From: Salpingoeca rosetta | Taxonomy: Eukaryota; Protista; Choanoflagellata | Reading direction: 5' to 3' | DNA length: 64,000 bases | Assembly: GCA_033442325.1 (NCBI GenBank) | Contig: JAWQFM010000023.1 | Coordinates: 1 to 64,000, forward strand | Shown here: positions 1 to 20,030 of the stretch, piece after piece | Layout of the letters: each line of letters opens with the position of its first letter | Position numbering within the stretch: the first letter of the stretch is position 1 | Program-made: the position numbers and the translations under genes | The notes under the pieces: generated by a model | The model's database searches: none | Told to the model about the DNA's origin: nothing | The model's input: only the letters and a program-made list of their open reading frames with translations

Positions 1-312
1 ACTCACCCGTGGCCAACTGCTGTTCCCACGGAACCTTGCTCCACTTCAGTCTTCAAAGCTCTCATTTGAATCGTTGCTACTGTCACCAAGATCTGCACTG
101 GAGGCCCCTCCACCCAGGCTCACGCCACAGGCTTCCACGGCTTGTTCAAAAGATTGCTCTCACGCAAACACCTCCACGCCCACCTACTTGTGTGTGGCTA
201 CATGTAGTTTTGAGACGCAACAAGCACGAATGCTCGCTTCGCTCGCTTTCTTCCACACACAGCGGAGTATAGGTACGACGCTTGAGCGCCATCCATTTTC
301 AGGGCTAGTTGA

Positions 313-346
<34 letters not shown>

Positions 347-588
347 ATTCCGACTTCCATGGCCACCGTCCTGCTGTCTATATCAACCAACACCTTTTGT
401 GGGTTCTCATGAGCGTCGATTCCGGCACCCTAACTCCGCGTTCGGTTCATCCCGCATCGCCAGTTCTGCTTACCAAAAATGGCCCACTTGAGACTCGGTT
501 ATTCAGCATTGCCCGCTTCATAAACAAAGAAAGCGCGCCGCCTTACCCATTTAAAGTTTGAGAATAGGTTGAGGGAAGTGGCTCCCCC

Positions 589-619
<31 letters not shown>

Positions 620-1572
620 AACTAACCACAGCAATAAAATAAGTCTCAGCTATCCTGAGGGAAACTTCGGTGGGAACCAGCTACTAGATGGTTCGATGAG
701 TCTTTCGCCCCTATACCCAAGTTCGACGACAGATTTGCACGTCATGATCGCTACGAGCCTCCACCAGAGTTTCCTCTGGCTTCGCCCTACTCAGGCATAG
801 TTCACCATCTATCGGGTCCTAACATCTGCGCTAAAACGCAAATCCTTCAGCGGAGGAGGGTGGATCCACACAAAAAGTGCTTTTCCCCCTCCCCCAATCC
901 AGATCGGTCGATGGTGCTGCGAGTGCTGCTGTTAAAAGTGTACTCACGCACACTTCCCAACACTGCATCCCACCTCTCACTTTCATTGCGCGCCCTAGCT
1001 TCATGCTCGCTAAAACACTCGCGCACATGTTAGACTCCTTGGTCCGTGTTTCAAGACGGGCCGTTTGCAGCCCTGTCGCCAGCATCTCCCCGGTGGTGTG
1101 CGCCAAGCGGCAAGCGCAACATTCCCAACACCGCCCGCACACACTCTGTCAACAGCACAAGAGAACGAGTCTCCCGTGCCAAAACAAGAGTCTGCGCAAC
1201 ACAATGCCGAGAACAGCACCCATGCCAAAGACCACATAACAAAGCCACCGCATCGATAATTTCCTCAGTCCCGCGTGCGACAGAAACATAAAAAGCAGAT
1301 GCGCCACGCACAAGGGCGCCCTCGCATCGCCGTCTCTCACACACAAAACTCATGCTGGCAGACACGCCCCGCGAGTGCAGGCAGCGCAGCACACAACAAC
1401 AGCAACGCAGCGGCGCACATGTGCAACAAGTACACACAATACACCCCCCGCACCACTGTTATGCACAACACCAACCCTGATCACAAGGCGCGCCCAGTCT
1501 CTGCTAGCTGCAAGCGATTCTCTGTCAACGGTTTCACGTACTGTTTAACTCTCTTTTCAAAGTGCTTTTCAT

Positions 1573-1606
<34 letters not shown>

Positions 1607-1854
1607 GTGCCAGTATTTAGCCTTGGATGCAGTTTACCACCCGGCTTTGGGCTGCATTCCCAAACAACCCGACTCAAGAGAATAAACGGACCACACACCG
1701 CACATCAGCGCAAATAATGTAGCACCAACGGGACTCTCACCCTCTCCGGTGTCCTCTTCCAAGGAAACTCGGTGCTGCGCCAAACAACAATGCACATTGC
1801 GAACACCTGCACCATCACAAAGACATGCGACGGCCCGCATCCCATAAAGACTAC
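1..1854 (-). rRNA. 28S (LSU) rRNA, internal fragment (about nt 152-2005), runs off the window edge and ends at an N gap
   Basis: Reverse complements of conserved LSU motifs: TCCTGAGGGAAACTTCG (LR5 site, ~652), CCGTGTTTCAAGACGGG (LR3 site, ~1044), TTTCCCTCACGGTACTTGTTCGCTATCGGTC (~1574). D2/D3 expansion segments are long and CA-rich on this strand. Confidence 0.98.
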
Positions 1855-1954
1855 NNNNNNNNNNNNNNNNNNNNNNNNNNNNNNNNNNNNNNNNNNNNNN
1901 NNNNNNNNNNNNNNNNNNNNNNNNNNNNNNNNNNNNNNNNNNNNNNNNNNNNNN
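1855..1954. other. Assembly gap (100 N)
   Basis: Run of N. Exactly 100 N often denotes a gap of unknown size. Confidence 1.
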
Positions 1955-1981
1955 AAAAAAACGAAACAAAACAAAGAATTG

Positions 1982-2169
1982 CCCTAACCCCTAACCCCTA
2001 ACCCCTAAACCCTAACCCCTACCCTAAACCTAACCCCTACCCTAACCCTAACCCTAACCCTAACCCTAAACCTAACCCTAACCCTAACCCTAACCCTAAC
2101 CCTAACCCTAACCCTAACCCTAACCCTAACCCTAACCCTAACCCTAACCCTAACCCTAACCCTAACCCT
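1982..2169 (+). repeat. Telomeric repeat (CCCTAA)n = (TTAGGG)n on the minus strand, about 30 units, oriented as a left chromosome end
   Basis: Perfect CCCTAA units from ~2070 to 2169. Variant units (CCCCTAA, CCCTA, CCTAAA) lie distally. Confidence 0.97.
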
Positions 2170-2170
2170 G

Positions 2171-2332
2171 AACTCGGTGCTGCGCCAAACAACAATGCAC
2201 ATTGCGAACAACATGCACCATCACAAAGACATGCGACGGCCCGCATCCCATAAAGACTACAACTCGCCACAATATGAAAAGTTTGTGGAGATTCCAATGC
2301 TTGAGCTCTTCCCGCTTCACTCGCCGTTACTG

Positions 2333-2366
<34 letters not shown>

Positions 2367-2411
2367 GTGATATGCTTAAGTTCAGGGGGTACCCTTGCCT
2401 GACCTGAGGTC
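2171..2411 (-). rRNA. 28S rRNA 5' end (about 241 nt), truncated and joined to the telomere repeat
   Basis: Minus strand starts GACCTCAGGTCAGGCAAGGGTACCCCCTGAACTTAAGCATATC...AAGGATTCCCTCAGTAACGGCGAGTGAAGCGGGAA. Positions 2171-2260 repeat 1766-1854. Confidence 0.95.
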
Positions 2412-3293
2412 AACAATGAGAAATGAGTAGAGGGGGAAGGGTTTGAGAGAGTTGCAAAGTGGAGTGGAGTGAGGTGGATGGATGCAGTCGTTTGTGCGCA
2501 TAGACTGCAACAAGTGCAGCGCTGTGCACACAAACTCAGTGCTCCGTCCATCACCATTCCAGCTTTCCTCTCTCTCGCAAGTACATTCCCTCTCTTCTTC
2601 ATCAGTGTTTTGCTCACATGACCAGTGTCACAAAAGCCACATAAAGATGCAAGCACACAAGTGCACATGCCTCTGCACACACACACACAGCATACACACG
2701 CTGCAGAACAACGATGCCAGTTGACACATCGCTCCACAGCTTGGTGTATCCTGCTGCATATGCAGATACAGCATGCGTGTGCTTGCCGTGGTCTCGCAAC
2801 AACGGCACCCACACAGCGACAGTGAGTGATGACAACAGTATGAGAATAAAGAAGTGGGATGTGTGTGTGAGTGAATCACATCAACAACAACAACACAACG
2901 CACAAGGCATCGTATCATCGTGCAATGCAATCCACATGCTCACACACACAAACACCCACTCCTTTCTTCGTCACAGTCACCATCACAGTTATCATCGCAA
3001 TGGAGTCGTAAGCTCTCCTCTTCAGGGTCCAGTCTCACACAATACACACACACAGCAAAAATGTGTGTGTGCACGCATCGACTAACACCCCATGGCCACC
3101 AACAATGCACAGTGTGCAAATGAGACATGAGGACATGCATGCATGGGCGCTTCATCATACTGCTACACAACAAACAAACACCACACCAACAAAGGTGCGC
3201 TGCTGCTGCTGCATAGTTGCAGTAATCAAATACACCCACACATACTCACACCCTCATAAGCACACAAAAACGCATTGTCAATGAGATTGAGTG
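2412..3293 (-). other. ITS2 (about 880 nt)
   Basis: Spacer between the 5.8S 3' end and the 28S 5' end. 5.8S CCTGAGTGTC can pair with 28S GACCTCAGG (proximal stem). Confidence 0.9.
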
Positions 3294-3477
3294 GCGACAC
3301 TCAGGCAGACATGCCCGCACGCACAGACACGCACACAATGGCGCATGCCCACACACACAGGCGCAATGTGCGTTCGAAGATTCAATGATTCACGGAATTC
3401 TGCAATTCACACTACATTTCGCGTCTTGCCACGTTCTTCATCGATGCACGAGCCAAGAGATCCACCGTTGAAAGTTG
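3294..3477 (-). rRNA. 5.8S rRNA (about 184 nt, enlarged 3' hairpin)
   Basis: Minus strand AACTTTCAACGGTGGATCTCTTGGCTCGTGCATCGATGAAGAACG...GAATTGCAGAATTC...TTCGAACGCACATTGCGCC...GCATGTCTGCCTGAGTGTC. Confidence 0.97.
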
Positions 3478-4128
3478 TCTCATGGTTATGAATTTGGTTG
3501 TGTTGAATGAGATGTTGAGATTGAAGTGAGGGTGGTTGCACTGTGCATGTGCATGTGTATGTGCATTCCAACGCACAATGTTTGTTGGCACACACTCCAC
3601 ACACAAGCACAACGCTCCCTCCCTCGCTCTCTTTCTCTCACTCACTCGTTTGTGGTTATCATGTGTGTATGTCCACAGCACGGCACGCATGCCTTTTGGT
3701 TGCTGTTGCTGCAGCAGAGATGCTTTCGCCCACACTGTCATGTGTGTGCAATCGCAGCCGCTGCCACAACAACAGTCCAAAACACACGCTTGCTTGCTGT
3801 GTTCATTTCTTCTTCTTCTTTGCACGAGGCAAACAATGTATACACACACACACACACGCAAGAGCACCGCCATCGCAATGCAACACACACAAGATGTGCT
3901 CCACTGCGACACACACAATGCTCATGCACGCATGCACATGCTTTTGCTTTGTTTTGTCTTCATTCACACAATGCTCACTCCCACACACAAAAGCGTGTGA
4001 GAGTGATTTGGTTGGTTGGCTCGGTTGGCTCAAGTTGACTCAGTCCAGTGTCTCCACCTTCCCTCACCAATTCTCACCAATTCTCGCCATCCCTCACCAA
4101 CCACGCTTTTCAACGTTTTCCTTGTTGG
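3478..4128 (-). other. ITS1 (about 650 nt)
   Basis: Spacer between the 18S 3' end (GGATCATT) and 5.8S. Contains four copies of a ~10-bp CTCACCAATT-like unit at ~4063-4100. Confidence 0.9.
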
Positions 4129-4185
<57 letters not shown>

Positions 4186-4278
4186 AATGATCAAGTTTGA
4201 CCAGGTTCTCAGCAAAGAAACACATGGGCAGCTGTTGCCAGCGCCCACGCGCCAATCCCGAGGCCTCACTAAACCATT

Positions 4279-4324
<46 letters not shown>

Positions 4325-4855
4325 ATCAACGCAATCTGTTGAATTGCGCTTACTAGGAATTCCTCGTTCAAGATGAATAATTGCAAGCATCTATCCCCAG
4401 CACGACGGGTTTTCACAAGAGTCCCCACGCCTTCCAGCGCAGGAATAGATGTCTGTCGTAGAAAAGCACAAGACTTTCCCCACCACAAACACCCAAAGCA
4501 TACTCGCTGCCCCCGTCAGTGTAGCGCGCGTGCAGCCCAGAACATCTAAGGGCATCACAGACCTGTTATCGCCTCAAACTTCCTTCGGCTTACGCTCAAT
4601 AGCAACGCCGAGTGTCCCTCTGAGTGGTGTGATGAGAGACACGCTTGCGCGTAATCTCCAACGCCTGCTAACGCAGGCGCACACCAATCAGCAAGTCAAG
4701 GTCTCGCCGTTTACCGTAATCAAACAGAGATTTCACAACAAAAGCTGGACGGCCATGCACCACCTCCCTTGGAATCAAGAAAGAGCTGTCAATCTGTCAA
4801 TCCTTCCCATGTCTGGACCTGGTGAGTTTCCCCGTGTTGAGTCAAATTAAGCCGC

Positions 4856-4902
<47 letters not shown>

Positions 4903-6220
4903 ATCTTGCGATCATACTCCCCCCGGAACCCAAACGCTTTGGTTTCCCTAAAGGTCCCGATGGCGCCACCACTTGATAAAAGTTTGTGCTGCCCACCGAG
5001 CCCTGGCCGGCATCGTTTATGGTTAAGACTACGACGGTATCTAATCGTCTTCGATCCCCTAACTTTCGTTCTTGATCAATGAAAGCGTCCTTGGCAAATG
5101 CTTTCGCAGTCGGCGGTCTTTCGTAAATCCAAGAATTTCACCTCTGACAACGAAATACCAGTGCCCCCAACCGTCCCTATTAATCATTACTTCAGACCCG
5201 ATGTGGTGAGGGAGGAACAAGAGAACCTTGCGGTTTCTCACTCCACACACCCCGCACCACACGCCAACAGTACAGGCCCAAAAGTCCTCTTCCGTTGTTC
5301 CATGCTAATCTATTCAAGCAAATCAAATGACTGCCTGCTTTGAACACTCTAATTTTTTCAAAGTAAAGCCCCCAACAGCGCCCCACCACTACGTGACTTG
5401 ACACACACCCAATCAAGGGCACGCGCCAAAGGCGCCACCAGGGAATATTAAAACTGCAGAGTGCAAACAGTGCGGGGCAAGGGCGAAACAGTGTCTCTCC
5501 CCCACCACACACCGCTGAACCCCGCATGAAATCCAACTACGAGCTTTTTAACTGCAACAACTTTAGTATACGCTTTTGGAGCTGGAATTACCGCGGCTGC
5601 TGGCACCAGACTTGCCCTCCAATTGTTCCTTGATAAGGTCTTTACATTGTTCTCATTCCAATTGCACAGTGCATAAAAACACCGTGCATTGGTATTTATT
5701 GTCACTACCTCCCTGTGTCAGGATTGGGTAATTTGCGCGCCTGCTGCCTTCCTTGGAAGTGGTAGCCGTCTCTCAGGCTCCCTCTCCGGAATCGAACCAA
5801 ATGTTCCCCGTCACCCGTTGTCACCATGGTAAGCCAATACCTTACCATCGAAAGTTGATAGGGCAGAAATTCGAATGAGACACCATCACACACAAAAGTG
5901 TGACGGTCAGCAAAGTTATTCTGATTCACCAGTCATGTTCCTGCTGGCTTTATACCTAACAAATGCAGCCCTCGAAAGGAAAAATGTGCATACACACACC
6001 TCTCTCTCGGGCCTTGTCGCACGTATTAGCTCTAGAATTACCACGGCTATCCGTCTAGCACAACACCGCTCCGAAAAACGAGTTGCAAACTATCAAATAA
6101 ACTATAACTGATTTAATGAGCCATTCGCAGTTTCACAGTATCAAGAATACTATTCATACTTAGACATGCATGGCTTAATCTTTGAGACAAGCATATGACT
6201 ACTGGCAGGATCGACCAGTT
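4129..6220 (-). rRNA. 18S (SSU) rRNA, complete, about 2090 nt
   Basis: 5' end AACTGGTCGATCCTGCCAGT; internal CCAGCAGCCGCGGTAATTCC, AAACTTAAAGGAATTGACGG and GTACACACCGCCCGTC; 3' end GTAGGTGAACCTGCGGAAGGATCATT. Confidence 0.99.
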
Positions 6221-9030
6221 ATCTCTCCATAGAAGGCGAGTGGCTGTTCGTGGTGTGTATTGAGTGCGTATGAATGCGCGAATACATGTGTAGATGTATG
6301 TGAATGCGTGTAGGTTGTAAGCCCAAAACACATTGCACACACAACACACACAAACACACCACATTTGCACACACAAACACACACAGCTGCCGCCCAGCTA
6401 TGGCTGTCGAGGATTCAGAGAAGAGACGAGATACACAAGCAAAGGGAAAAGAGAGAGAAGAAACACACAACAATGCAATGAATGTCATGCATCTTCCCTT
6501 CTTCTTCCCCTCACTGTCCACTCACTAACTCCTCCTGCACCCCAACAAACAAAGCTTCCACAAGCAACACGCACATCGCTGCACGTGCCACTCGGGTCGT
6601 TCTGTTTTTCTTTTTGGTTTTGTTCTTGTGGCTATGCACACAACAACAACCCCAGACACACACACAAAAAAGGTGTGTGAATAAAGCAGTTTCATTCAAT
6701 GCAAATACACAACGTGTGTGCTGTTTCCTATGAGCGCCAGTGACAACAACCTGCTCTGCCAACAATACACACACACCACCATTGTTTCACATGTGCATGC
6801 ATGTGCATGGTGTGTGTGTGCAAACAACGCAACGTTGCTCACACAACACACAACACAGACAGCGCACACAACTACAATGGCAGCACGTGCCCATCAGCAG
6901 CATGCAGTGCGCATGGCTCTCTTTCGAAACAACACACAACACTGTTTCGCATCAAATATACTTCATCCACGCATGTGTGCGTGCCCAACATCATCATCGT
7001 GCTCACAGCACAGTTTGCCTCCACTCATGATAGAGTGTTGCTCAAGGCACCCTCTCAAGAAGAACAATCCACACCGCTCTCACGGCGGGATTGCCTCCTG
7101 CATGCGCAAGCTTGGTGTCATCAAGGACAGTCGCCACCTGCCGTTAATCAATACGGCAGACAGCGCCCACCCTCTATCAGAGATCACAGCAGGTATACAC
7201 ACATATGTGTGCCTTGCCGTCACTCCGCCAGCGGCTTGCAACTTGCTTCAACATCATAGACTTTTGGCTCAACAGCAGCAATCCATGCAAAGCTTTGCTT
7301 GCTCTCGCTCGCAATACTTCATCGACCCGCATGTCACAGCGGGCTGCGTCTTGCCTCCAAAGGCAACCACAGCCACACCCACAACACACAGCTGACAACG
7401 TTTTCGTTTCACTGTGCCACATCCACGTGTGCAGCAAAGCAACTGCCAGCCATTCCTCAACACACAAACACATATTGGCTCATCGCCCTTCTCCCAACGC
7501 ACAGCTACACACACAAGGAAAATGCAAGCCCATTCATGCGCACACACGTCATCTACGCGCCAGGCACATCGCTGTGCCCGGGTCTCAATGCACCATGCGT
7601 GCAGGCTTGCTTCCTGCGTCTCGCTGCGTCACATCACTGTGAGGAGAGAAGAACAATCAAGAGCCAACAATGCGTGTTCATGTGAAAAGAAATGTCCAGC
7701 GCTTCACACTGTCACACTCAGAGGAAGCTGAACAATCAGCTCGCCCTCTTTCCGCAAACACAGTCGTTGCTCGCCACAAGCGCATGTCGTGTGTTGCTTT
7801 GCTTCTGTGTGGTAGAGATGCGTTTGCTCATGCGAGTGATCACAAGAACACACACAGAGACACGAGCAATCGCTTGCTCGCCTCCCCACATGTGCCTCAT
7901 CACACCCACACAATGCTCACGCATCACACACACAAGCATCCACACACAAGCACGCGCCCGTGCTGTTCTCATTGCATGCGCTGTTCATGCATGTGTGCTC
8001 GTGCAAGCATTGCTCACAACACAATCAAGTGTCGCTTCGCTTTGCCTGCACTCACACACACACTTCACACACGCACACGCAAATGAAGAGAGAGGTCGCT
8101 CAGAACACAGCAGATCCAAGACCCAAGAAGAAATAGAAGTTGTAGCTGCAAGGGCGCAGACGCGGCTTTTCGTGCCCGCAAGCAATCCTGCTCAGCGACA
8201 ATCGCCTTGCTCTCATGCTTGCGCCTCTACTCAGCGGCTCTTTGCCTTTGCCTTCTCTTTTCCTTATTTGTCTTGCTCATTTGCATCCTTCCCCTCATGT
8301 ATGCCAATCCATCGAGCGGCAGCTGTTTGAACCGCTGCTTTGCCCTCGTGCACTTTGCCTGCAGGCACCGCAATCTAGATTCAGTGATTCTGCTAGATCT
8401 GGATTTGTGACTGGATCTAGCAAGCACGCACAGCTTCACTGCATCAAGATTGTTCACACTGCTCACACCCCAGATTCCCCTGGCCCGTGACCAACCAATG
8501 CTTGCATGCATGCAATGCCCTTGCGCTTGGGCTGCACAGCTGCACAGCTGCACTGGTGCCTCGCGACGCAGTGTTCAGACACTACTCATCACAGTGTTCA
8601 GCCTTTTTTCATCACAACATCGCACTTTTTCTGCACCCCTTTTTGACTTCCCCACTCCAGTCTCCCTACTCCGGTGATCAAGTGAGCAAACGAGCAAACG
8701 TCACTGCGCCATGCCATGAGCTGCAGCAACAGGCACAAGACCACGTGGCTGGCTCGCAGGCACACGTGCGCGCGAGCACACTGCGCTGTGCGCACTTCTA
8801 CTTGCCTGCAGGCACGCATCGCTGAAGCAAGAAGGAGCAAAGCAGAGGAACTGCGGAGTAGAGCAGCGAGGATGGATTCCTTTCCGTGTGATTGCACAAG
8901 AAATAAGTAAGCAGGCAGAGAACGACGAGGAGCAGCGCAAGGGACACGTGTGCATGTGTGTGTGTGCATGCATTTGTGTGTAAATGTTGCCTGCAGGCAC
9001 GGGAACGTGTTTCTGATTGAAGCGGAATGG
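6221..9030 (-). other. 5' ETS and probable Pol I promoter region (boundary unknown)
   Basis: Lies immediately upstream of 18S, shares the UG-rich composition of the ITSs and has no credible ORF. Start site not identifiable by eye. Confidence 0.6.
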
Positions 9031-9034
9031 ATGC

Positions 9035-9345
9035 GTAGCAATCCTCTGCTCACTGCAGACACACTTCCATGCGATTGTGCAGTGTTACTGTGTGCTTACA
9101 AGCATTGGCAGCTTCTTCTACTTGCATTGGATTCACTGCACGACGATCCCTCTGCTCACTGCAGACACACTTGCATGCGATTGTGCAGTCCTGCTATGTT
9201 GCTCGCGAGCATTGGTTAGTTCTCCTAATTTAAATGGATTCGATGAGTAGCAATCCTCTGCTCACTTCAGACACACTTGCATGCGATTGTGCAGTGTTAC
9301 TGTGTTGCTCGCAAGCATTGGTAGCTTCTCCTGCATTGATTGAAT
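9035..9345. repeat. rDNA IGS subrepeat A, ~106-bp unit, at least 3 copies, running into the gap
   Basis: CCTCTGCTCACT(G/T)CAGACACACTT(C/G)CATGCGATTGTGCAGT recurs at ~9043, ~9149 and ~9255. Confidence 0.9.
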
Positions 9346-9494
9346 NNNNNNNNNNNNNNNNNNNNNNNNNNNNNNNNNNNNNNNNNNNNNNNNNNNNNNN
9401 NNNNNNNNNNNNNNNNNNNNNNNNNNNNNNNNNNNNNNNNNNNNNNNNNNNNNNNNNNNNNNNNNNNNNNNNNNNNNNNNNNNNNNNNNNNNNN
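9346..9494. other. Assembly gap inside the IGS subrepeats
   Basis: Run of N flanked by tandem repeats. Confidence 1.
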
Positions 9495-9960
9495 CATCCG
9501 TCTACTCACTCGCAACTTCTCCTGCTTGCATTGGATCCACTCCACGACATCCGTCTACTCACTCGCAAACACTCACAACTTCTCCTGCTTCGATTGGATT
9601 CACTCCACTGCATCCGTCTACTCACTGTTGTGTTACCTGCAAGCACTCACAACATCCCCCTGCTTGCATTGAATTTCACTCCACGACATCCGTCTACTCA
9701 CTCGCAAACACTCACAACATCTCCCCACTTTGCATTGGATTCACTCCCACCACATCCGTCTGCAAGCACTCACAACACCTCCTGCTTCCATTGGATTCAC
9801 TCCACTACACCCGTCTACTCACTCGCAAGCACTCACACCATCTCCTGCTTGCATTGGAGGGACTCGAAGACATACGTGTAGTCACACGCAGGCGATCACA
9901 CCTTCCTTCTCTTGCATTGGAGCAACTCTACTACAAATCCGTCTACTCGGTGCAGACGCT
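9495..9960. repeat. rDNA IGS subrepeat B, degenerate ~55-75-bp unit, about 7 copies
   Basis: CATCCGTCTACTCACTCGCAA...CTCCTGCTTGCATTGGATTCACTCC recurs at ~9495, 9548, 9611, 9687, 9753 and 9808, decaying by ~9940. Confidence 0.88.
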
Positions 9961-12900
9961 TCATGCGTACGCTTGCTTGCTCTGTGCGTGTTGCTTGCAA
10001 GCGCCCACAACTTTCCTTGCTTCCACCCTGTTCACTTCACAATAATCCTCCACTCACTCCCCACTGCTCCACAGCATCACCCACCATGCCTGCACGTACC
10101 TGCAATCGACCCTTTATCAATCTACACCATCACTCACACACCGCTCTGTCACCCCCCTCGCCACTTCACTCCACTCCACTCTACTTCACTCAGCAGCATC
10201 ACCTCCCGTCTTGGATTCACTCCCCAACATCACCTGCGCTTCCTTTTTCTCGCCGCCAGTAGCGACATGGTCAGGTGCGCAAGAAGCTCGCTGCGATGAT
10301 CTTCTCCTCTTCCCACTTTACCTTCTCTCTTCGTGCATGTGTGCTATTGCTTGCAATATTTGTGCTTCTGCTTCCTTCGCTCCACCGCCACAATCACAAC
10401 CCAACCCAAAACACAACACAACAGCACATCCATGCATGTGCCGCTTTGTTCCTTCTTCTCACACTTCACTCACTTGCGCCTTTCTCTCTTCCGTGTGCCT
10501 TTCCAGATTCCATGTGTTGCTTTGTTGCTTTGCACTTGTTGCCACATGCTTCATTCACCCTTGGCCCTCTTTCTCTCTTCCATCCACTCACCACCACACA
10601 GCACATCTCCACACAACATCCTTCACTTCACTTCACTTCACACAACACAACACAACACCACATACAACACACTGTGTGCATTCGTGCTTCCCTTCGTCCC
10701 TTTCTGTCGCCACCTTGTCACCACAAGCCTTGTTTGTCCATTTCACCTGCGTTCCACCACCCCTCCTGTCTTGTTTCAATTCTTGCCACTGCTGCTGTTG
10801 TTTCCACGTACTTGCATGCCTACCCTTGTCTCTGTTCACTACTTTGTGTCGCCACTCCTTCCCCTTCCCTCCCCTTTCCTGCCTCGTTCATGTTTCATGC
10901 TGCATGTGTTACAACACATCATAAACCCATCAAGCCCACACTGCCGCCTTCTTCACCATCAGCCCTGTTCACCACCACCATCACCACTCGCTGCCACCAT
11001 TACTCACTCGCTTCATCCTTTCCCACCCACTCCCACGTTCACAGCAGCTGCTGCTGTCCTCACCTGCATGCAGCACCCACTCCACAGCCACACGCCTAGC
11101 TCACCACCAATCCAATCCACATCACATCATACACACACACTGTGCTGACTTCACTGCACCCACCAGCACCCATCCACACCACCACCAGTACCACACGATA
11201 CACACAGCTGCACACGCGTGGTGCATTGTATGATTCCACTTCACTTCAGCAACACGACAGCAAGCAAACACACACGCGCACACACGTGGCAAGAATAAGC
11301 GAGAAAACATCCCCATATCAACTGCAAGCAACACACACACACACACACGCAACAAGCGACAGCTCCATGCTACGCCACACCGCTTCACGGCTTGCATCCA
11401 CTGGTCCATCCATGCAGTAGTGGTGATGGCAGCAGAGGAGAGAAGGAAGAGTATGCCTTGCCCTGCCTTGCCTGCCTGCCTTGGCTGTGTGTGAGGATGT
11501 GTGCCTGCACACCCACTCACTCACTGTGTGTGTGTGTGTGTCACCATCCAAACACACACAGGTATGTGAGACAGAGGGAAGCAAGCAGCCACACATACAC
11601 ACACACACACAGTGTGAATCACAAGCAGACACAGCATGAACGACATACACACAGTCACAGTCACGCACATGCAAGTGCAACGCACCGTGAGGTAGGCATC
11701 AGACTGCCTGTCAGCGTGCGTGTGTGTGTGTGTGTGTTCACACACTCATGTGTGTGGGTCGATGCAGCCCATCATCCCTCTGTGTGTGTGTGTGTCTGTG
11801 CGTGTGAGCCAAATGCATCCACAGCAGCAGGAGAGCGTGTGAGGTCACAACACCCACCACAGCCACGTCCCACTCTCCCTCCTTCACATACACAATCACA
11901 CGCACCCACACAGCAGTCAAACCAATTGACAGAACTCACCCAAACTCACGGTGCCAGCGTGGCATGGGCCTGTGCAGCACATATGTCAGCCTCACTGACC
12001 GTGGGCAACGCCTTGCATGCCTTTGGCCCTGCACACATCCATGGTGTGGTCGCTGCTGTGCGTGTTCTCTGCTTGCACCTGCGCACCATCACAACATCAC
12101 CCACCACACCCCACACAGTCCATGGAACCAAACGAGACCACCCACAACAGGACCGCCAGTGAGTGCCCGTCACAACGCGCACCCTCTCCCTCCTCTCCAC
12201 CAACCCTGCGCCAGCCACGCACACGAACAACGCAACCCACCACCTCCCACTCAAACACACACACCTTGATTCGTGTTTTCGCCTGTCGCTTGTCGCTTGT
12301 TTGTGTGTGTTTGGGCGATTAGTGGAAGATGCCACAAATAATCGCCCACTGCTGCGGTTGTGCGGCAACTGCTGTTTGCTTCTGCGTTTGCTTGTTGAAG
12401 GGCGGACTTGCTTGGTTGTTTGGTTGCTTGGTTGGTTTCAATGAGACAAGAAGAAGGGGGAAGGGGGAAGGGGAACGGCACTGCGTGTGAATGCAACGCA
12501 GGCTCACAGGCCTTGCAGGCTGAGGAGGGAAGGGAGAAGAAGGGGAGAAGAAAGGGGGATGGAAAAGAAGAAGCAACAAACACACAACACACACACACAC
12601 ACACAGCTGTGCACAGCATGCATCCCCTCCCCTTCTTCTCTTCTTCGCTTCTTCCTCCTCCTCACAGTCATAACAGACAACCAACAGCCACAAAGGGCCG
12701 GAAGAGAAAACAAACAAGGGGGAGGGGGCAACAGCCGCCCAGCCAGATCGCCATGGAAGAAAGAGGCGAGGTGATAGAGGGGGGGGGGGAGGAAGTAGAA
12801 CACCGCCCATCAACACACACACACATCTGTTGGGAGCCCCACGTCTTGTGTCCTTGCTTCCCCTCTTCCTTTCCTTGGCCTGGGTTGAGTTGGGTTGGTT

Positions 12901-19911: not shown

Positions 19912-20030
19912 GGCAACGTTCATTCCAACGGGATCACGCCCGCTCTCGTCCGATCGCGGAAGCTAAGCCCGTTTGGGCCCGTTCAGTACTGCCGTGGGTG
20001 ACCAGGCGGGAATCACGGGTGATGTTGCTC
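19912..20030 (+). rRNA. 5S rRNA (119 nt)
   Basis: GGCAACGTTCATTCCAACGGGATCACGCCCGCTCTCGTCCGATCGCGGAAGCTAAGC...AGTACTGCCGTGGGTGACCAGGCGGGAATCACGGGTGATGTTGCTC. Box A (AGCTAAGC) and box C (TGGGTGACC) present; terminal helix GGCAACGTT/GATGTTGCT pairs. Confidence 0.95.

What the first reader, a model, noticed from the sequence alone, without database searches (positions are those of the whole stretch)
1766..2411. Telomere added directly inside the 28S gene: a telomere-capped, truncated terminal rDNA unit
Seen: within one contig, (CCCTAA)n abuts 28S sequence with no subtelomere. On the transcribed strand the intact gene reads CCGAGTT-TCCTTGG (left contig), while this copy reads CCGAGTT-C-AGGGTTAGGG. 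The break end GTT matches the repeat register (GTT-AGGG) apart from one extra C, as expected for telomerase healing. The 90 nt after the junction (2171-2260) repeat 1766-1854 but differ locally (GAACACCTGC vs GAACAACATGC), so they look like different rDNA copies. Inference: the chromosome ends in an rDNA unit broken at 28S nt ~241, and contig 1-1854 comes from intact units scaffolded outside the true end. Telomere-capped truncated rDNA is known from e.g. Giardia and some fungi; I do not know of it in choanoflagellates. A fixed break site would suggest programmed fragmentation or linear rDNA minichromosomes.
Basis: partly seen in the sequence, partly recalled or inferred. Interest (0 to 1): 0.82.

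Follow-up and report, generated by a model that had tools for sequence, protein, structure and literature searches.

The report
Telomere-capped, broken rRNA gene unit
In this assembly a chromosome end of the choanoflagellate (very probably Salpingoeca rosetta) stops inside the large-subunit rRNA gene and is capped directly by telomere repeats; this is an ordinary healed break, one of at least six in a genome where rRNA genes sit next to most chromosome ends.

Summary
(CCCTAA)n at 1981-2169 abuts the first ~243 nt of a minus-strand 28S gene (2170-2412). ITS2, 5.8S, ITS1 and a full 18S follow. The repeat has the right orientation for a left chromosome end.

The N gap is not a simple gap. Its two sides overlap by 89 nt of non-identical 28S, so contig 1-1854 comes from another rDNA copy placed outside the end.

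All 10 other rDNA copies compared are intact across the break point. I verified five more telomere junctions in rDNA-unit sequence on other scaffold ends, each at a different place:
- ITS2
- 18S nt 1399
- 845 nt upstream of 18S
- 28S nt ~2180
- 28S near helix 69, with a satellite between gene and telomere

All six have the G-strand running outward. A fixed break site, programmed fragmentation and an rDNA minichromosome are therefore not supported.

Best reading: terminal breakage or erosion of a subtelomeric rDNA unit, healed by telomerase.

The kind is known (Chlamydomonas, Giardia, Arabidopsis). The 2013 genome paper called the assembled telomeres "aberrant or newly formed". This scan had already noted the ITS2 and 18S cases on other DNA.

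More notable is the context: 45S units point outward at 17 or more scaffold ends, and 5S genes lie near about 28 ends.

The parts
1..1854 (-). 28S rRNA gene fragment (about nt 152 to ~2000 of the gene) from another, intact-type rDNA copy. It was placed outside the telomere by scaffolding.
   Evidence: Rfam LSU hit. It is 99% identical to C7:1-1752 and 97-98% to C3, C25 and C30. Its last 89 nt duplicate 2171-2260 with 1 indel and 1 mismatch.
1855..1954 (.). Scaffold gap of 100 N. It is a join of two contigs that overlap as paralogues, not missing sequence of known length.
   Evidence: The same pattern, a gap just outside a telomere tract, is seen at C5, C17, C24 and C12.
1955..1980 (.). 26 nt of A-rich non-telomeric letters at the contig tip, most likely a low-quality read end.
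   Evidence: No other match in the genome with up to 3 mismatches. A similar A-rich, homopolymer-rich tail of 240 nt precedes the C12 tract.
1981..2169 (-). Telomere tract: (CCCTAA)n on the + strand, so the G-rich strand runs 5'->3' toward the left end. The inner 95 nt are perfect. The outer units carry homopolymer-type errors.
   Evidence: TRF; sequence; pattern search.
2170..2412 (-). 28S 5' stub of about 243 nt. Position 2170 is the ambiguous junction base.
   Evidence: Rfam LSU model starts at 2412. Aligned with 10 intact copies, all of which continue past the break.
2413..3294 (-). ITS2, specific to this copy (92-94% identical to other copies).
   Evidence: At least 55% of the sampled words of 2150-3300 are held by 14 runs from 7 studies.
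3295..3476 (-). 5.8S rRNA gene: 100% identical to eight other copies over its full length, to C9 over the 109 nt aligned, and 99.45% to C3.
   Evidence: Rfam, 144.6 bits, full model.
3477..4127 (-). ITS1 (87-90% identical to other copies).
4128..6221 (-). 18S rRNA gene, full length.
   Evidence: Rfam SSU, 1594 bits, model 1-1831.
6222..11800 (-). Region upstream of 18S (5' ETS, promoter, spacer) shared with other chromosome ends. Identity is 93% at first and falls to ~82%. It holds 106-nt and 63-nt tandem repeats and a 149-N gap at 9346-9494.
   Evidence: The C5 telomere abuts the equivalent of position 7066.
19912..20030 (+). 5S rRNA gene pointing away from the telomere. It belongs to the shared subtelomere architecture.
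   Evidence: Rfam, 94.9 bits. About 30 copies of the gene and its flanks lie near scaffold ends, oriented according to the end.

Best explanation
The left end of this chromosome (scaffold C23) carries one of the genome's many subtelomeric rRNA gene units, transcribed toward the telomere. The end was lost by breakage or erosion up to about nt 243 of the 28S gene. Telomerase then added (TTAGGG)n directly to the broken end (de novo telomere addition, 'chromosome healing'). What remains is the upstream spacer, 18S, ITS1, 5.8S, ITS2 and a 28S stub, so this unit can no longer make 28S rRNA. Contig 1-1854 belongs to other, intact units. The scaffolder put it beyond the end through read pairs in the repeated rDNA.

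Shown: the junction, its orientation, that other copies are intact, and the recurrence of such junctions at different sites.

Inferred: that telomerase did it, that the tract is physically terminal, and that the left contig is a false join.
For: 1. Junction and orientation: C-strand repeats at the left of the contig, with the rRNA sense strand running into them.

2. All 10 other copies compared are intact across the break.

3. The stub is contiguous with copy-specific D1 and ITS2 sequence.

4. rDNA units lie at or near 17 or more scaffold ends, and all but one of them have 28S pointing outward (C30 near 795 kb points inward). A telomere is therefore expected right here.

5. Five further junctions between telomere repeats and rDNA-unit sequence, each elsewhere in the unit, all with the G-strand outward:
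- C36: ITS2, with the tract at scaffold position 1-395
- C17: 18S nt 1399
- C5: 845 nt upstream of 18S
- C25 left end: 28S nt ~2180
- C24: 28S near helix 69, then a 39-nt satellite, then the telomere

6. Junctions sit at 1-2 nt matches to the repeat: TT at C5 and C36, A at C17, and GGGTT in the C24 satellite. This fits telomerase priming better than blunt chimeric ligation.

7. The 18S-to-5S spacing of 13.48 kb in C23 equals that at C25R, C17R, C19L, C4R and C9L (13.1-13.6 kb). The unit therefore belongs to this chromosome end.

8. [quoted passage not shown] Fosmid mates confirmed four of the six as terminal.
Against: - No read-level support could be obtained.
- The tract lies at a contig tip. 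Its outer part has homopolymer-type errors and 26 nt of non-telomeric letters, so support may be only one or a few reads.
- The junction has an odd base (C) that the telomere repeat does not explain.
- The scaffold as deposited places DNA beyond the tract.
- At C17 the tract is followed by 72 nt that match C10:9302-9374 at 97%. At least one such tract may therefore be interstitial or chimeric.
- I could not map C23 reliably onto the paper's Table S3. A supercontig of similar size (1,216 kb) is listed there as 'TTAGGG assembled: No, about 5 kb missing'.
Confidence: 0.75

Rival explanations
1. Assembly or cloning artefact. One chimeric Sanger clone or 454 read joined telomere repeats to a 28S fragment and extended the contig tip. 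On this reading the real C23 unit has an intact 28S.
For: - The tract is at a contig end.
- The distal repeats are error-laden, and 26 nt of junk precede them.
- The junction has an odd base.
- The assembly is a hybrid of 454/Newbler and Sanger/Arachne with manual edits.
- No read check was possible.
Against: - Six such junctions exist, on six scaffold ends and at six sites. All have the orientation expected of a true end, which by chance alone would be 1/64.
- Short matches to the repeat occur at the junctions.
- The position is exactly where a telomere is expected.
- The assembly holds no intact 28S with this copy's D1 variants.
Confidence: 0.12
2. Interstitial telomere tract. The healed end later acquired more DNA distally (subtelomere capture, or an element that inserts at telomeres). 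On this reading the scaffold order is right and the tract is internal.
For: - The deposited scaffold order.
- Non-telomeric letters beyond the tracts at C23 (26 nt) and C17, where 72 nt match a subtelomeric place on C10.
- The C25L tract is interrupted by (GT)n.
- C1 has a short, genuinely internal tract.
- Earlier notes report virus-like elements next to telomere tracts.
Against: - The supposed distal contig repeats 89 nt of the stub and runs in the same orientation. That is what a false join through intact copies predicts.
- The 26 nt match nothing else in the genome and look like a low-quality read end, as at C12.
- At C36 the tract is the scaffold terminus.
- The contigs outside the C5 and C24 tracts are unrelated and end in microsatellites.
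Confidence: 0.09
3. Programmed fragmentation at a fixed site in 28S, or linear extrachromosomal rDNA molecules with telomeres, as in ciliates or slime moulds.
For: Only the resemblance: a telomere directly on rDNA. One break site near helix 69 is shared by C24, C14 and C35. Their common ~20-115 nt flank makes shared descent or an inserted element the likelier cause.
Against: - The break positions differ at all six junctions.
- There is no palindrome and no second telomere.
- The unit is joined to a 1.22 Mb scaffold with family-typical 18S-to-5S spacing.
- All other copies are intact at this site.
Confidence: 0.02

Closest known systems
Chlamydomonas reinhardtii class D subtelomeres (Chaux-Jukic et al. 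2021, PMC8287924)
   Same: Telomere repeats cap rDNA directly with nothing in between. One junction interrupts the 18S gene, and one end carries a truncated rDNA array. The authors invoke telomere healing.
   Different: There the rDNA is in long tandem arrays on three ends. Here single units lie on many ends, and six different truncation points are seen.
Aurantiochytrium limacinum 'universal subtelomeric rRNA genes' (bioRxiv 10.1101/2023.06.15.545109)
   Same: The 18S-5.8S-28S cluster is transcribed toward the telomere on every chromosome end, with a linked 5S gene nearby. This matches the architecture seen here.
   Different: In Aurantiochytrium the units are homogeneous and separated from the telomere by LORE-TEARS repeats, and no truncated, healed units are reported. 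Here the spacers differ by 6-13% between ends.
Encephalitozoon cuniculi subtelomeres (PMC4704409)
   Same: One rDNA unit near each chromosome end.
   Different: 5S is not subtelomeric there. Telomere-associated repeats lie between the unit and the telomere. The genome is a tiny parasite genome.
Giardia telomere-rDNA junctions and Arabidopsis NOR2/NOR4
   Same: Telomere repeats joined to rDNA, including truncated units in Giardia. This rests on my own knowledge (Adam et al. 1991; Copenhaver and Pikaard 1996). Both organisms are also cited.
   Different: Only a few chromosome ends are involved.
'Aberrant or newly formed telomeres' of the S. rosetta genome paper (Fairclough et al. 2013, PMC4054682)
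   Same: Same organism and assembly lineage. Six supercontigs with assembled TTAGGG were judged newly formed telomeres that lack the usual subtelomeric repeats.
   Different: The main text never mentions rDNA (0 occurrences), junction positions or the 5S/45S architecture. My mapping of C23 onto its table is uncertain.
Linear rDNA minichromosomes (Tetrahymena, Physarum, Dictyostelium)
   Same: Telomere repeats adjacent to rRNA genes.
   Different: Those are short, often palindromic molecules made by site-specific breakage. None of these features is present here.

Membership tests
De novo telomere addition at a terminal deletion (chromosome healing) | Telomere repeats, G-strand outward, directly abut sequence that is internal in intact copies | tested here: met
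   Ten intact copies continue past the junction.
De novo telomere addition at a terminal deletion (chromosome healing) | No subtelomeric element between the break and the repeats | tested here: met
   at most one ambiguous base between the 28S and the repeats.
De novo telomere addition at a terminal deletion (chromosome healing) | Short match to the telomerase template at the junction | tested here: inconclusive
   C23 ends in TT but is followed by an unexplained C, or else by a 28S-derived C with a shortened T-run. The match is clear at C5 and C36 (TT) and at C17 (A).
De novo telomere addition at a terminal deletion (chromosome healing) | The tract is the physical end of the molecule, supported by many reads | not testable with these tools
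All listed runs are kept only as contigs.
Universal subtelomeric rRNA genes (Aurantiochytrium / Encephalitozoon type) | 45S units at most chromosome ends, transcribed toward the telomere | tested here: met
   About 20 loci. At least 17 lie within ~40 kb of a scaffold end, and all but one of those point outward. This is assembly-level evidence only.
Universal subtelomeric rRNA genes (Aurantiochytrium / Encephalitozoon type) | Single units rather than tandem arrays | tested here: inconclusive
   No second unit lies within the 64 kb window, and 5S follows 13.5 kb upstream. Collapsed or unassembled arrays cannot be excluded. One search scored only 3 candidates.
Universal subtelomeric rRNA genes (Aurantiochytrium / Encephalitozoon type) | Linked 5S gene in the subtelomere | tested here: met
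   28 of 30 full copies lie 2-60 kb from a scaffold end, on the + strand at left ends and the - strand at right ends.
Linear rDNA minichromosome / programmed fragmentation | Fixed breakage site shared by all molecules | tested here: not met
   Six junctions at six positions.
Linear rDNA minichromosome / programmed fragmentation | Short molecule with telomeres at both ends, or a palindrome | tested here: not met
   The unit continues into a 1.22 Mb scaffold. No inverted copy is present in the window.

The most novel reading that the evidence does not exclude
This choanoflagellate has a 'universal subtelomeric rRNA gene' architecture. [quoted passage not shown] The spacers are not homogenised between ends (6-13% divergence), while 5.8S stays identical. 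The ends are unstable: seven of the eight terminal-type telomere tracts that I examined in the reference assembly are joined to rDNA-unit sequence. Six of these are neo-telomeres healed onto truncated rDNA-unit sequence at different sites. The seventh, at C30, is inferred from coordinates only and was not read. The C23 junction is one member of this natural deletion series. Until now such an architecture has been described only in a thraustochytrid, in microsporidia and in nucleomorphs. Here it would occur in the closest living relatives of animals.
Probability: 0.6. Interest if true: 0.6.

Novelty: new member of a known kind. Interest (0 to 1): 0.42.

Why it matters
The junction itself is an ordinary healed chromosome break. 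It matters in three practical ways.

1. The reference scaffolds of a major model organism for animal origins carry foreign contigs beyond true telomeres, at C23, C5, C17 and C24. These should be trimmed.

2. Six healed ends inside one repeated unit form a natural series. It shows that this organism's telomerase readily seeds new telomeres on 1-2 nt of match. That is useful for chromosome engineering and for telomere biology in the closest living relatives of animals.

3. The junction points to an rRNA gene layout that appears not to have been described for choanoflagellates: single units and 5S genes at most chromosome ends, with spacers that are not homogenised between ends. This bears on how nucleoli, concerted evolution and chromosome ends are organised.

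Tried and rejected
- **Read laying on window 2140-3294 with four runs from four studies:** The tool described this as a filter that can also trip by chance, and the call was counted.
- **Second read-laying run beside those places (2140-2314):** There is therefore no read or contig evidence for or against the junction.
- **The look-up of sequencing runs:** gave only contig-kept runs. It shows that the copy-specific ITS2 stretch is held by 14 runs from 7 studies. It says nothing about the junction.
- **The search for homologous proteins on the junction-spanning ORF (2040-2297, minus strand):** run in the hope of finding predicted peptides from independent assemblies. It came back blank, which is uninformative.
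- **Bulk fetch of 20 scaffold ends:** I used small fetches instead.
- **Rfam scan on 14 loci at once:** failed internally.
- **Mapping C23 onto Table S3 of the genome paper:** failed because the scaffold sizes and numbers differ between versions.
- **Rejected readings:** a fixed break site, a minichromosome, and a telomere-like repeat native to the 28S (it is absent from the 10 other copies).
- **28S break near helix 69 shared by C24, C14 and C35:** earlier notes attribute it to a Polinton-like virus with an I-PpoI-type endonuclease. I did not test this.

Full report
**What is in the window**

The window is the first 64 kb of scaffold C23, which is 1,220,055 bp long. The assembly is 55.4 Mb in 68 scaffolds. 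Its size, its TTAGGG telomeres and earlier notes point to Salpingoeca rosetta.

Rfam places an rRNA gene unit on the minus strand:
- 18S at 4128-6221, matching the full model
- 5.8S at 3295-3476
- 28S starting at 2412 and running leftward

At 2169/2170 the 28S stops. A tract of (CCCTAA)n extends from there to 1981 (TRF: 30.7 copies). Before it lie 26 A-rich letters (1955-1980), 100 N (1855-1954), and a separate contig (1-1854) that is again 28S on the minus strand.

C-rich repeats at the left of a contig mean that the G-rich strand runs 5'->3' toward the left end. That is the orientation of a true left telomere. The rRNA sense strand runs into it.

**The gap**

I tested this first, as asked. 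The two sides are not continuous. 1766-1854 and 2171-2260 are the same 89-90 nt of 28S (about nt 152-243 of the gene), with one indel and one mismatch.

The left contig is therefore a paralogous copy that overlaps the stub. An intact unit would imply a negative gap. The left contig is 99% identical to C7 and 97-98% to C3, C25 and C30. In the D1 region the stub matches C8 and C4 instead.

The scaffolder, fed by read pairs from the repeated rDNA, is the likely cause. The assembly was made from 454/Newbler and Sanger/Arachne data with manual edits. The same habit is visible elsewhere:
- At C5 and C24, unrelated contigs ending in microsatellites lie beyond an N gap next to a telomere tract.
- At C17, 9.7 kb follow a tract and a gap.

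**The junction**

On the rRNA strand it reads ...GCACCGAGTT-C-AGGGTTAGGG. Ten other copies read ...GCACCGAGTTTCCTTGGAAGAGG. There are two ways to read this:
- The break is at ...GAGTT and one extra C precedes the repeats.
- The C is the 28S-derived C of GAGTTTC and the T-run is one base short. With 454 data in the assembly that could be a miscall.

The outer repeat units (1981-2075) show CCCC/CCC and AAA/AA errors, whereas the inner 95 nt are perfect. The tip of the contig is probably thinly covered. The 26-nt tail matches nothing else in the genome, even with three mismatches allowed. It resembles the 240-nt A- and G-run junk before the C12 tract. I read it as a poor read end.

**Where the rDNA lies in this genome**

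Searches of the whole assembly with the ITS2/28S stub, the 28S body and ITS1/18S, combined with scaffold lengths, give about 20 rDNA loci.

At least 17 lie within about 40 kb of a scaffold end, most within 25 kb, and all but one of those have 28S pointing outward. They are C23L, C4L, C7L, C9L, C14L, C19L, C24L, C30L, C32L, C35L, C36L, C8R, C17R, C22R, C25R, C36R and C4R.

The exceptions:
- Two convergent units about 14 kb apart inside C3. This looks like two ends joined tail to tail.
- One unit at C30 near 795 kb, 30 kb inside an internal telomere tract at 764,104.

The 5S gene at 19912-20030 (+) and its flanks have about 30 copies. Of these, 28 lie 2-60 kb from a scaffold end, always on the + strand at left ends and the - strand at right ends.

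The distance from the 18S 5' end to the 5S block is 13.48 kb in C23. It is 13.1-13.6 kb at C25R, C17R, C19L, C4R and C9L (computed). This supports the join across the 149-N gap at 9346-9494, and hence the place of this unit on this chromosome.

Copies are not homogenised. Against ten other copies:
- ITS2 is 92-94% identical.
- ITS1 is 87-90% identical.
- 5.8S is 100% identical to eight copies over its full length and to C9 over the 109 nt aligned; C3 is 99.45%.

**Other telomere junctions**

A census of tracts with 132 nt or more of perfect repeat finds six: C5, C17, C24, C25, C30 and C36. Shorter tracts are at C23, C12, C1 and C7.

| Scaffold end | Where the tract abuts | Junction (G-strand) |
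|---|---|---|
| C36, scaffold position 1-395 | ITS2 | ...CTGGCTT/AGGG |
| C17 right end | 18S after nt 1399 | ...AAACTCA/GGGTTAGGG |
| C5 | 845 nt upstream of 18S; the whole 45S gene set is gone | ...GGATTGTT/AGGG |
| C25 left end | 270-nt relic of 28S, at about nt 2180 | not tabulated |
| C24 | 39-nt satellite whose unit contains GGGTT, about 370 nt beyond a 28S broken near helix 69 | satellite between gene and telomere |

With C23, that makes six junctions on six scaffold ends at six different positions, all with the G-strand outward.

Random chimeras would have the right orientation only half the time each. They would also not favour junctions at TT or A that match the repeat register. I take the class to be real, and C23 to be a member of it.

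Of the eight terminal-type tracts, seven are joined to rDNA-unit sequence. The C30 case rests on coordinates alone, because I did not read its flanks.

The likely reason for this bias is ascertainment. Untruncated ends share long repeats and did not assemble, whereas a truncated end has a unique junction next to copy-specific spacer.

This fits the genome paper. [quoted passage not shown] It confirmed four of them as terminal by fosmid mates. Its main text does not mention rDNA.

**Mechanism**

Best reading, about 0.75: terminal loss by breakage or erosion within a subtelomeric rDNA unit, followed by de novo telomere addition by telomerase.
- Shown: the structure, the orientation, that other copies are intact, and the recurrence at varied sites.
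- Inferred: the enzyme, the terminal position of the tract, and the false join of contig 1-1854.

The unit keeps a full 18S and a 5.8S that matches the other copies, so there is no sign of decay in the mature-rRNA parts compared. It cannot make 28S. If it is still transcribed, Pol I would run into the telomere. I could not test this.

**Rivals**

- A chimeric read at the contig tip (about 0.12) is not excluded for this one junction, because I have no read evidence.
- An interstitial tract with real DNA beyond it (about 0.09). The best argument for it is at C17, where the tract is followed by 72 nt that match C10:9302-9374 at 97%. I cannot explain this. For C23 the 'distal' contig is just what a false join through intact copies predicts.
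- A fixed break site, programmed fragmentation or a minichromosome (about 0.02) is contradicted by the varied break points and by the linkage to a megabase scaffold.

The only shared break is near helix 69, at GGAAGT|AACTATGAC, next to the R2/I-PpoI target. It is common to C24, C14 and C35, together with 20-115 nt of shared flank. The 28S 3' third was found only at C3, C8 and C30. Earlier notes ascribe this break to a Polinton-like virus carrying an I-PpoI-family endonuclease. I did not test that.

**What could not be done**

All runs found are kept only as contigs. A peptide search with the junction-spanning ORF was blank.

**Comparison and novelty**

Telomeres directly on rDNA, including inside rRNA genes, are known:
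- Chlamydomonas: three junctions, one of them interrupting 18S.
- Arabidopsis NORs and Giardia: from my own knowledge, and cited.

Units on every chromosome end, transcribed toward the telomere and with a linked 5S gene, are described for Aurantiochytrium. There the arrangement is called highly unusual, and Encephalitozoon and nucleomorphs are named as the nearest parallels. My literature searches found no such description for choanoflagellates.

The given finding is thus a new member of a known kind. This scan had already noted sister cases (ITS2, 18S, helix 69) on other DNA of this genome. I checked those three directly, assuming that the C36, C17 and C24 junctions I read are the ones those notes describe. 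The surrounding architecture is the more interesting lead.

Noticed in passing
window 19912-20030 (+) and about 30 other places: The 5S rRNA gene with about 500 nt of flank is a subtelomeric element. 28 of 30 full copies lie 2-60 kb from a scaffold end, on the + strand at left ends and the - strand at right ends. The spacing from 18S is 13.1-13.6 kb at six ends.
   Followed up: partly
window 2413-4127 compared with L002-L011: rDNA copies are not homogenised. ITS2 is 92-94% and ITS1 87-90% identical between chromosome ends. 5.8S is 100% identical to eight copies over its full length and to C9 over the 109 nt aligned, and 99.45% to C3. Concerted evolution seems weak for spacers in this dispersed family.
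   Followed up: partly
L018:545-600 (C24), L020:476-590 (C14), L024/L056 (C35), C12:1392500-1392964: The 28S is broken at the same nucleotide near helix 69, beside the R2/I-PpoI target, in at least three ends. They share 20-115 nt of flank. The 28S 3' third was found only at C3, C8 and C30. Earlier notes suggest a Polinton-like virus insertion.
   Followed up: partly
G000:C3:1866861-1889725: Two rDNA units face each other, 28S ends inward, about 14 kb apart in the middle of a 2.8 Mb scaffold. This is either a false join of two chromosome ends or an old end-to-end fusion.
   Followed up: no
L058:429-501 (C17:1385378-1385450) and C10:9302-9374: 72 nt of good-looking non-telomeric sequence follow the C17 telomere tract. 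They match a place 9.3 kb from the left end of C10 at 97%. The cause may be a chimera or a captured subtelomere. It is unexplained.
   Followed up: partly
L064:72-120 (C25:72-120): The telomere tract at the very start of scaffold C25 is interrupted by (GT)18 plus 13 other letters. After it, only a 270-nt relic of 28S remains before unrelated sequence begins.
   Followed up: partly
window 9016-9332 and 9507-9948: Tandem repeats of 106 nt (3 copies) and 63 nt (about 7 copies) flank the 149-N gap, about 3 kb upstream of 18S. They may be spacer or enhancer-type repeats.
   Followed up: no
L025:1500-1547 (C1:2745611-2745658): A short (48 nt) telomere-like tract lies inside a contig, far from any scaffold end and with ordinary sequence on both sides. 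It is a genuinely interstitial tract.
   Followed up: no
window, whole: (CA)n/(GT)n microsatellites are extremely dense, roughly one per kb. This probably explains why so many contigs end in them.
   Followed up: no
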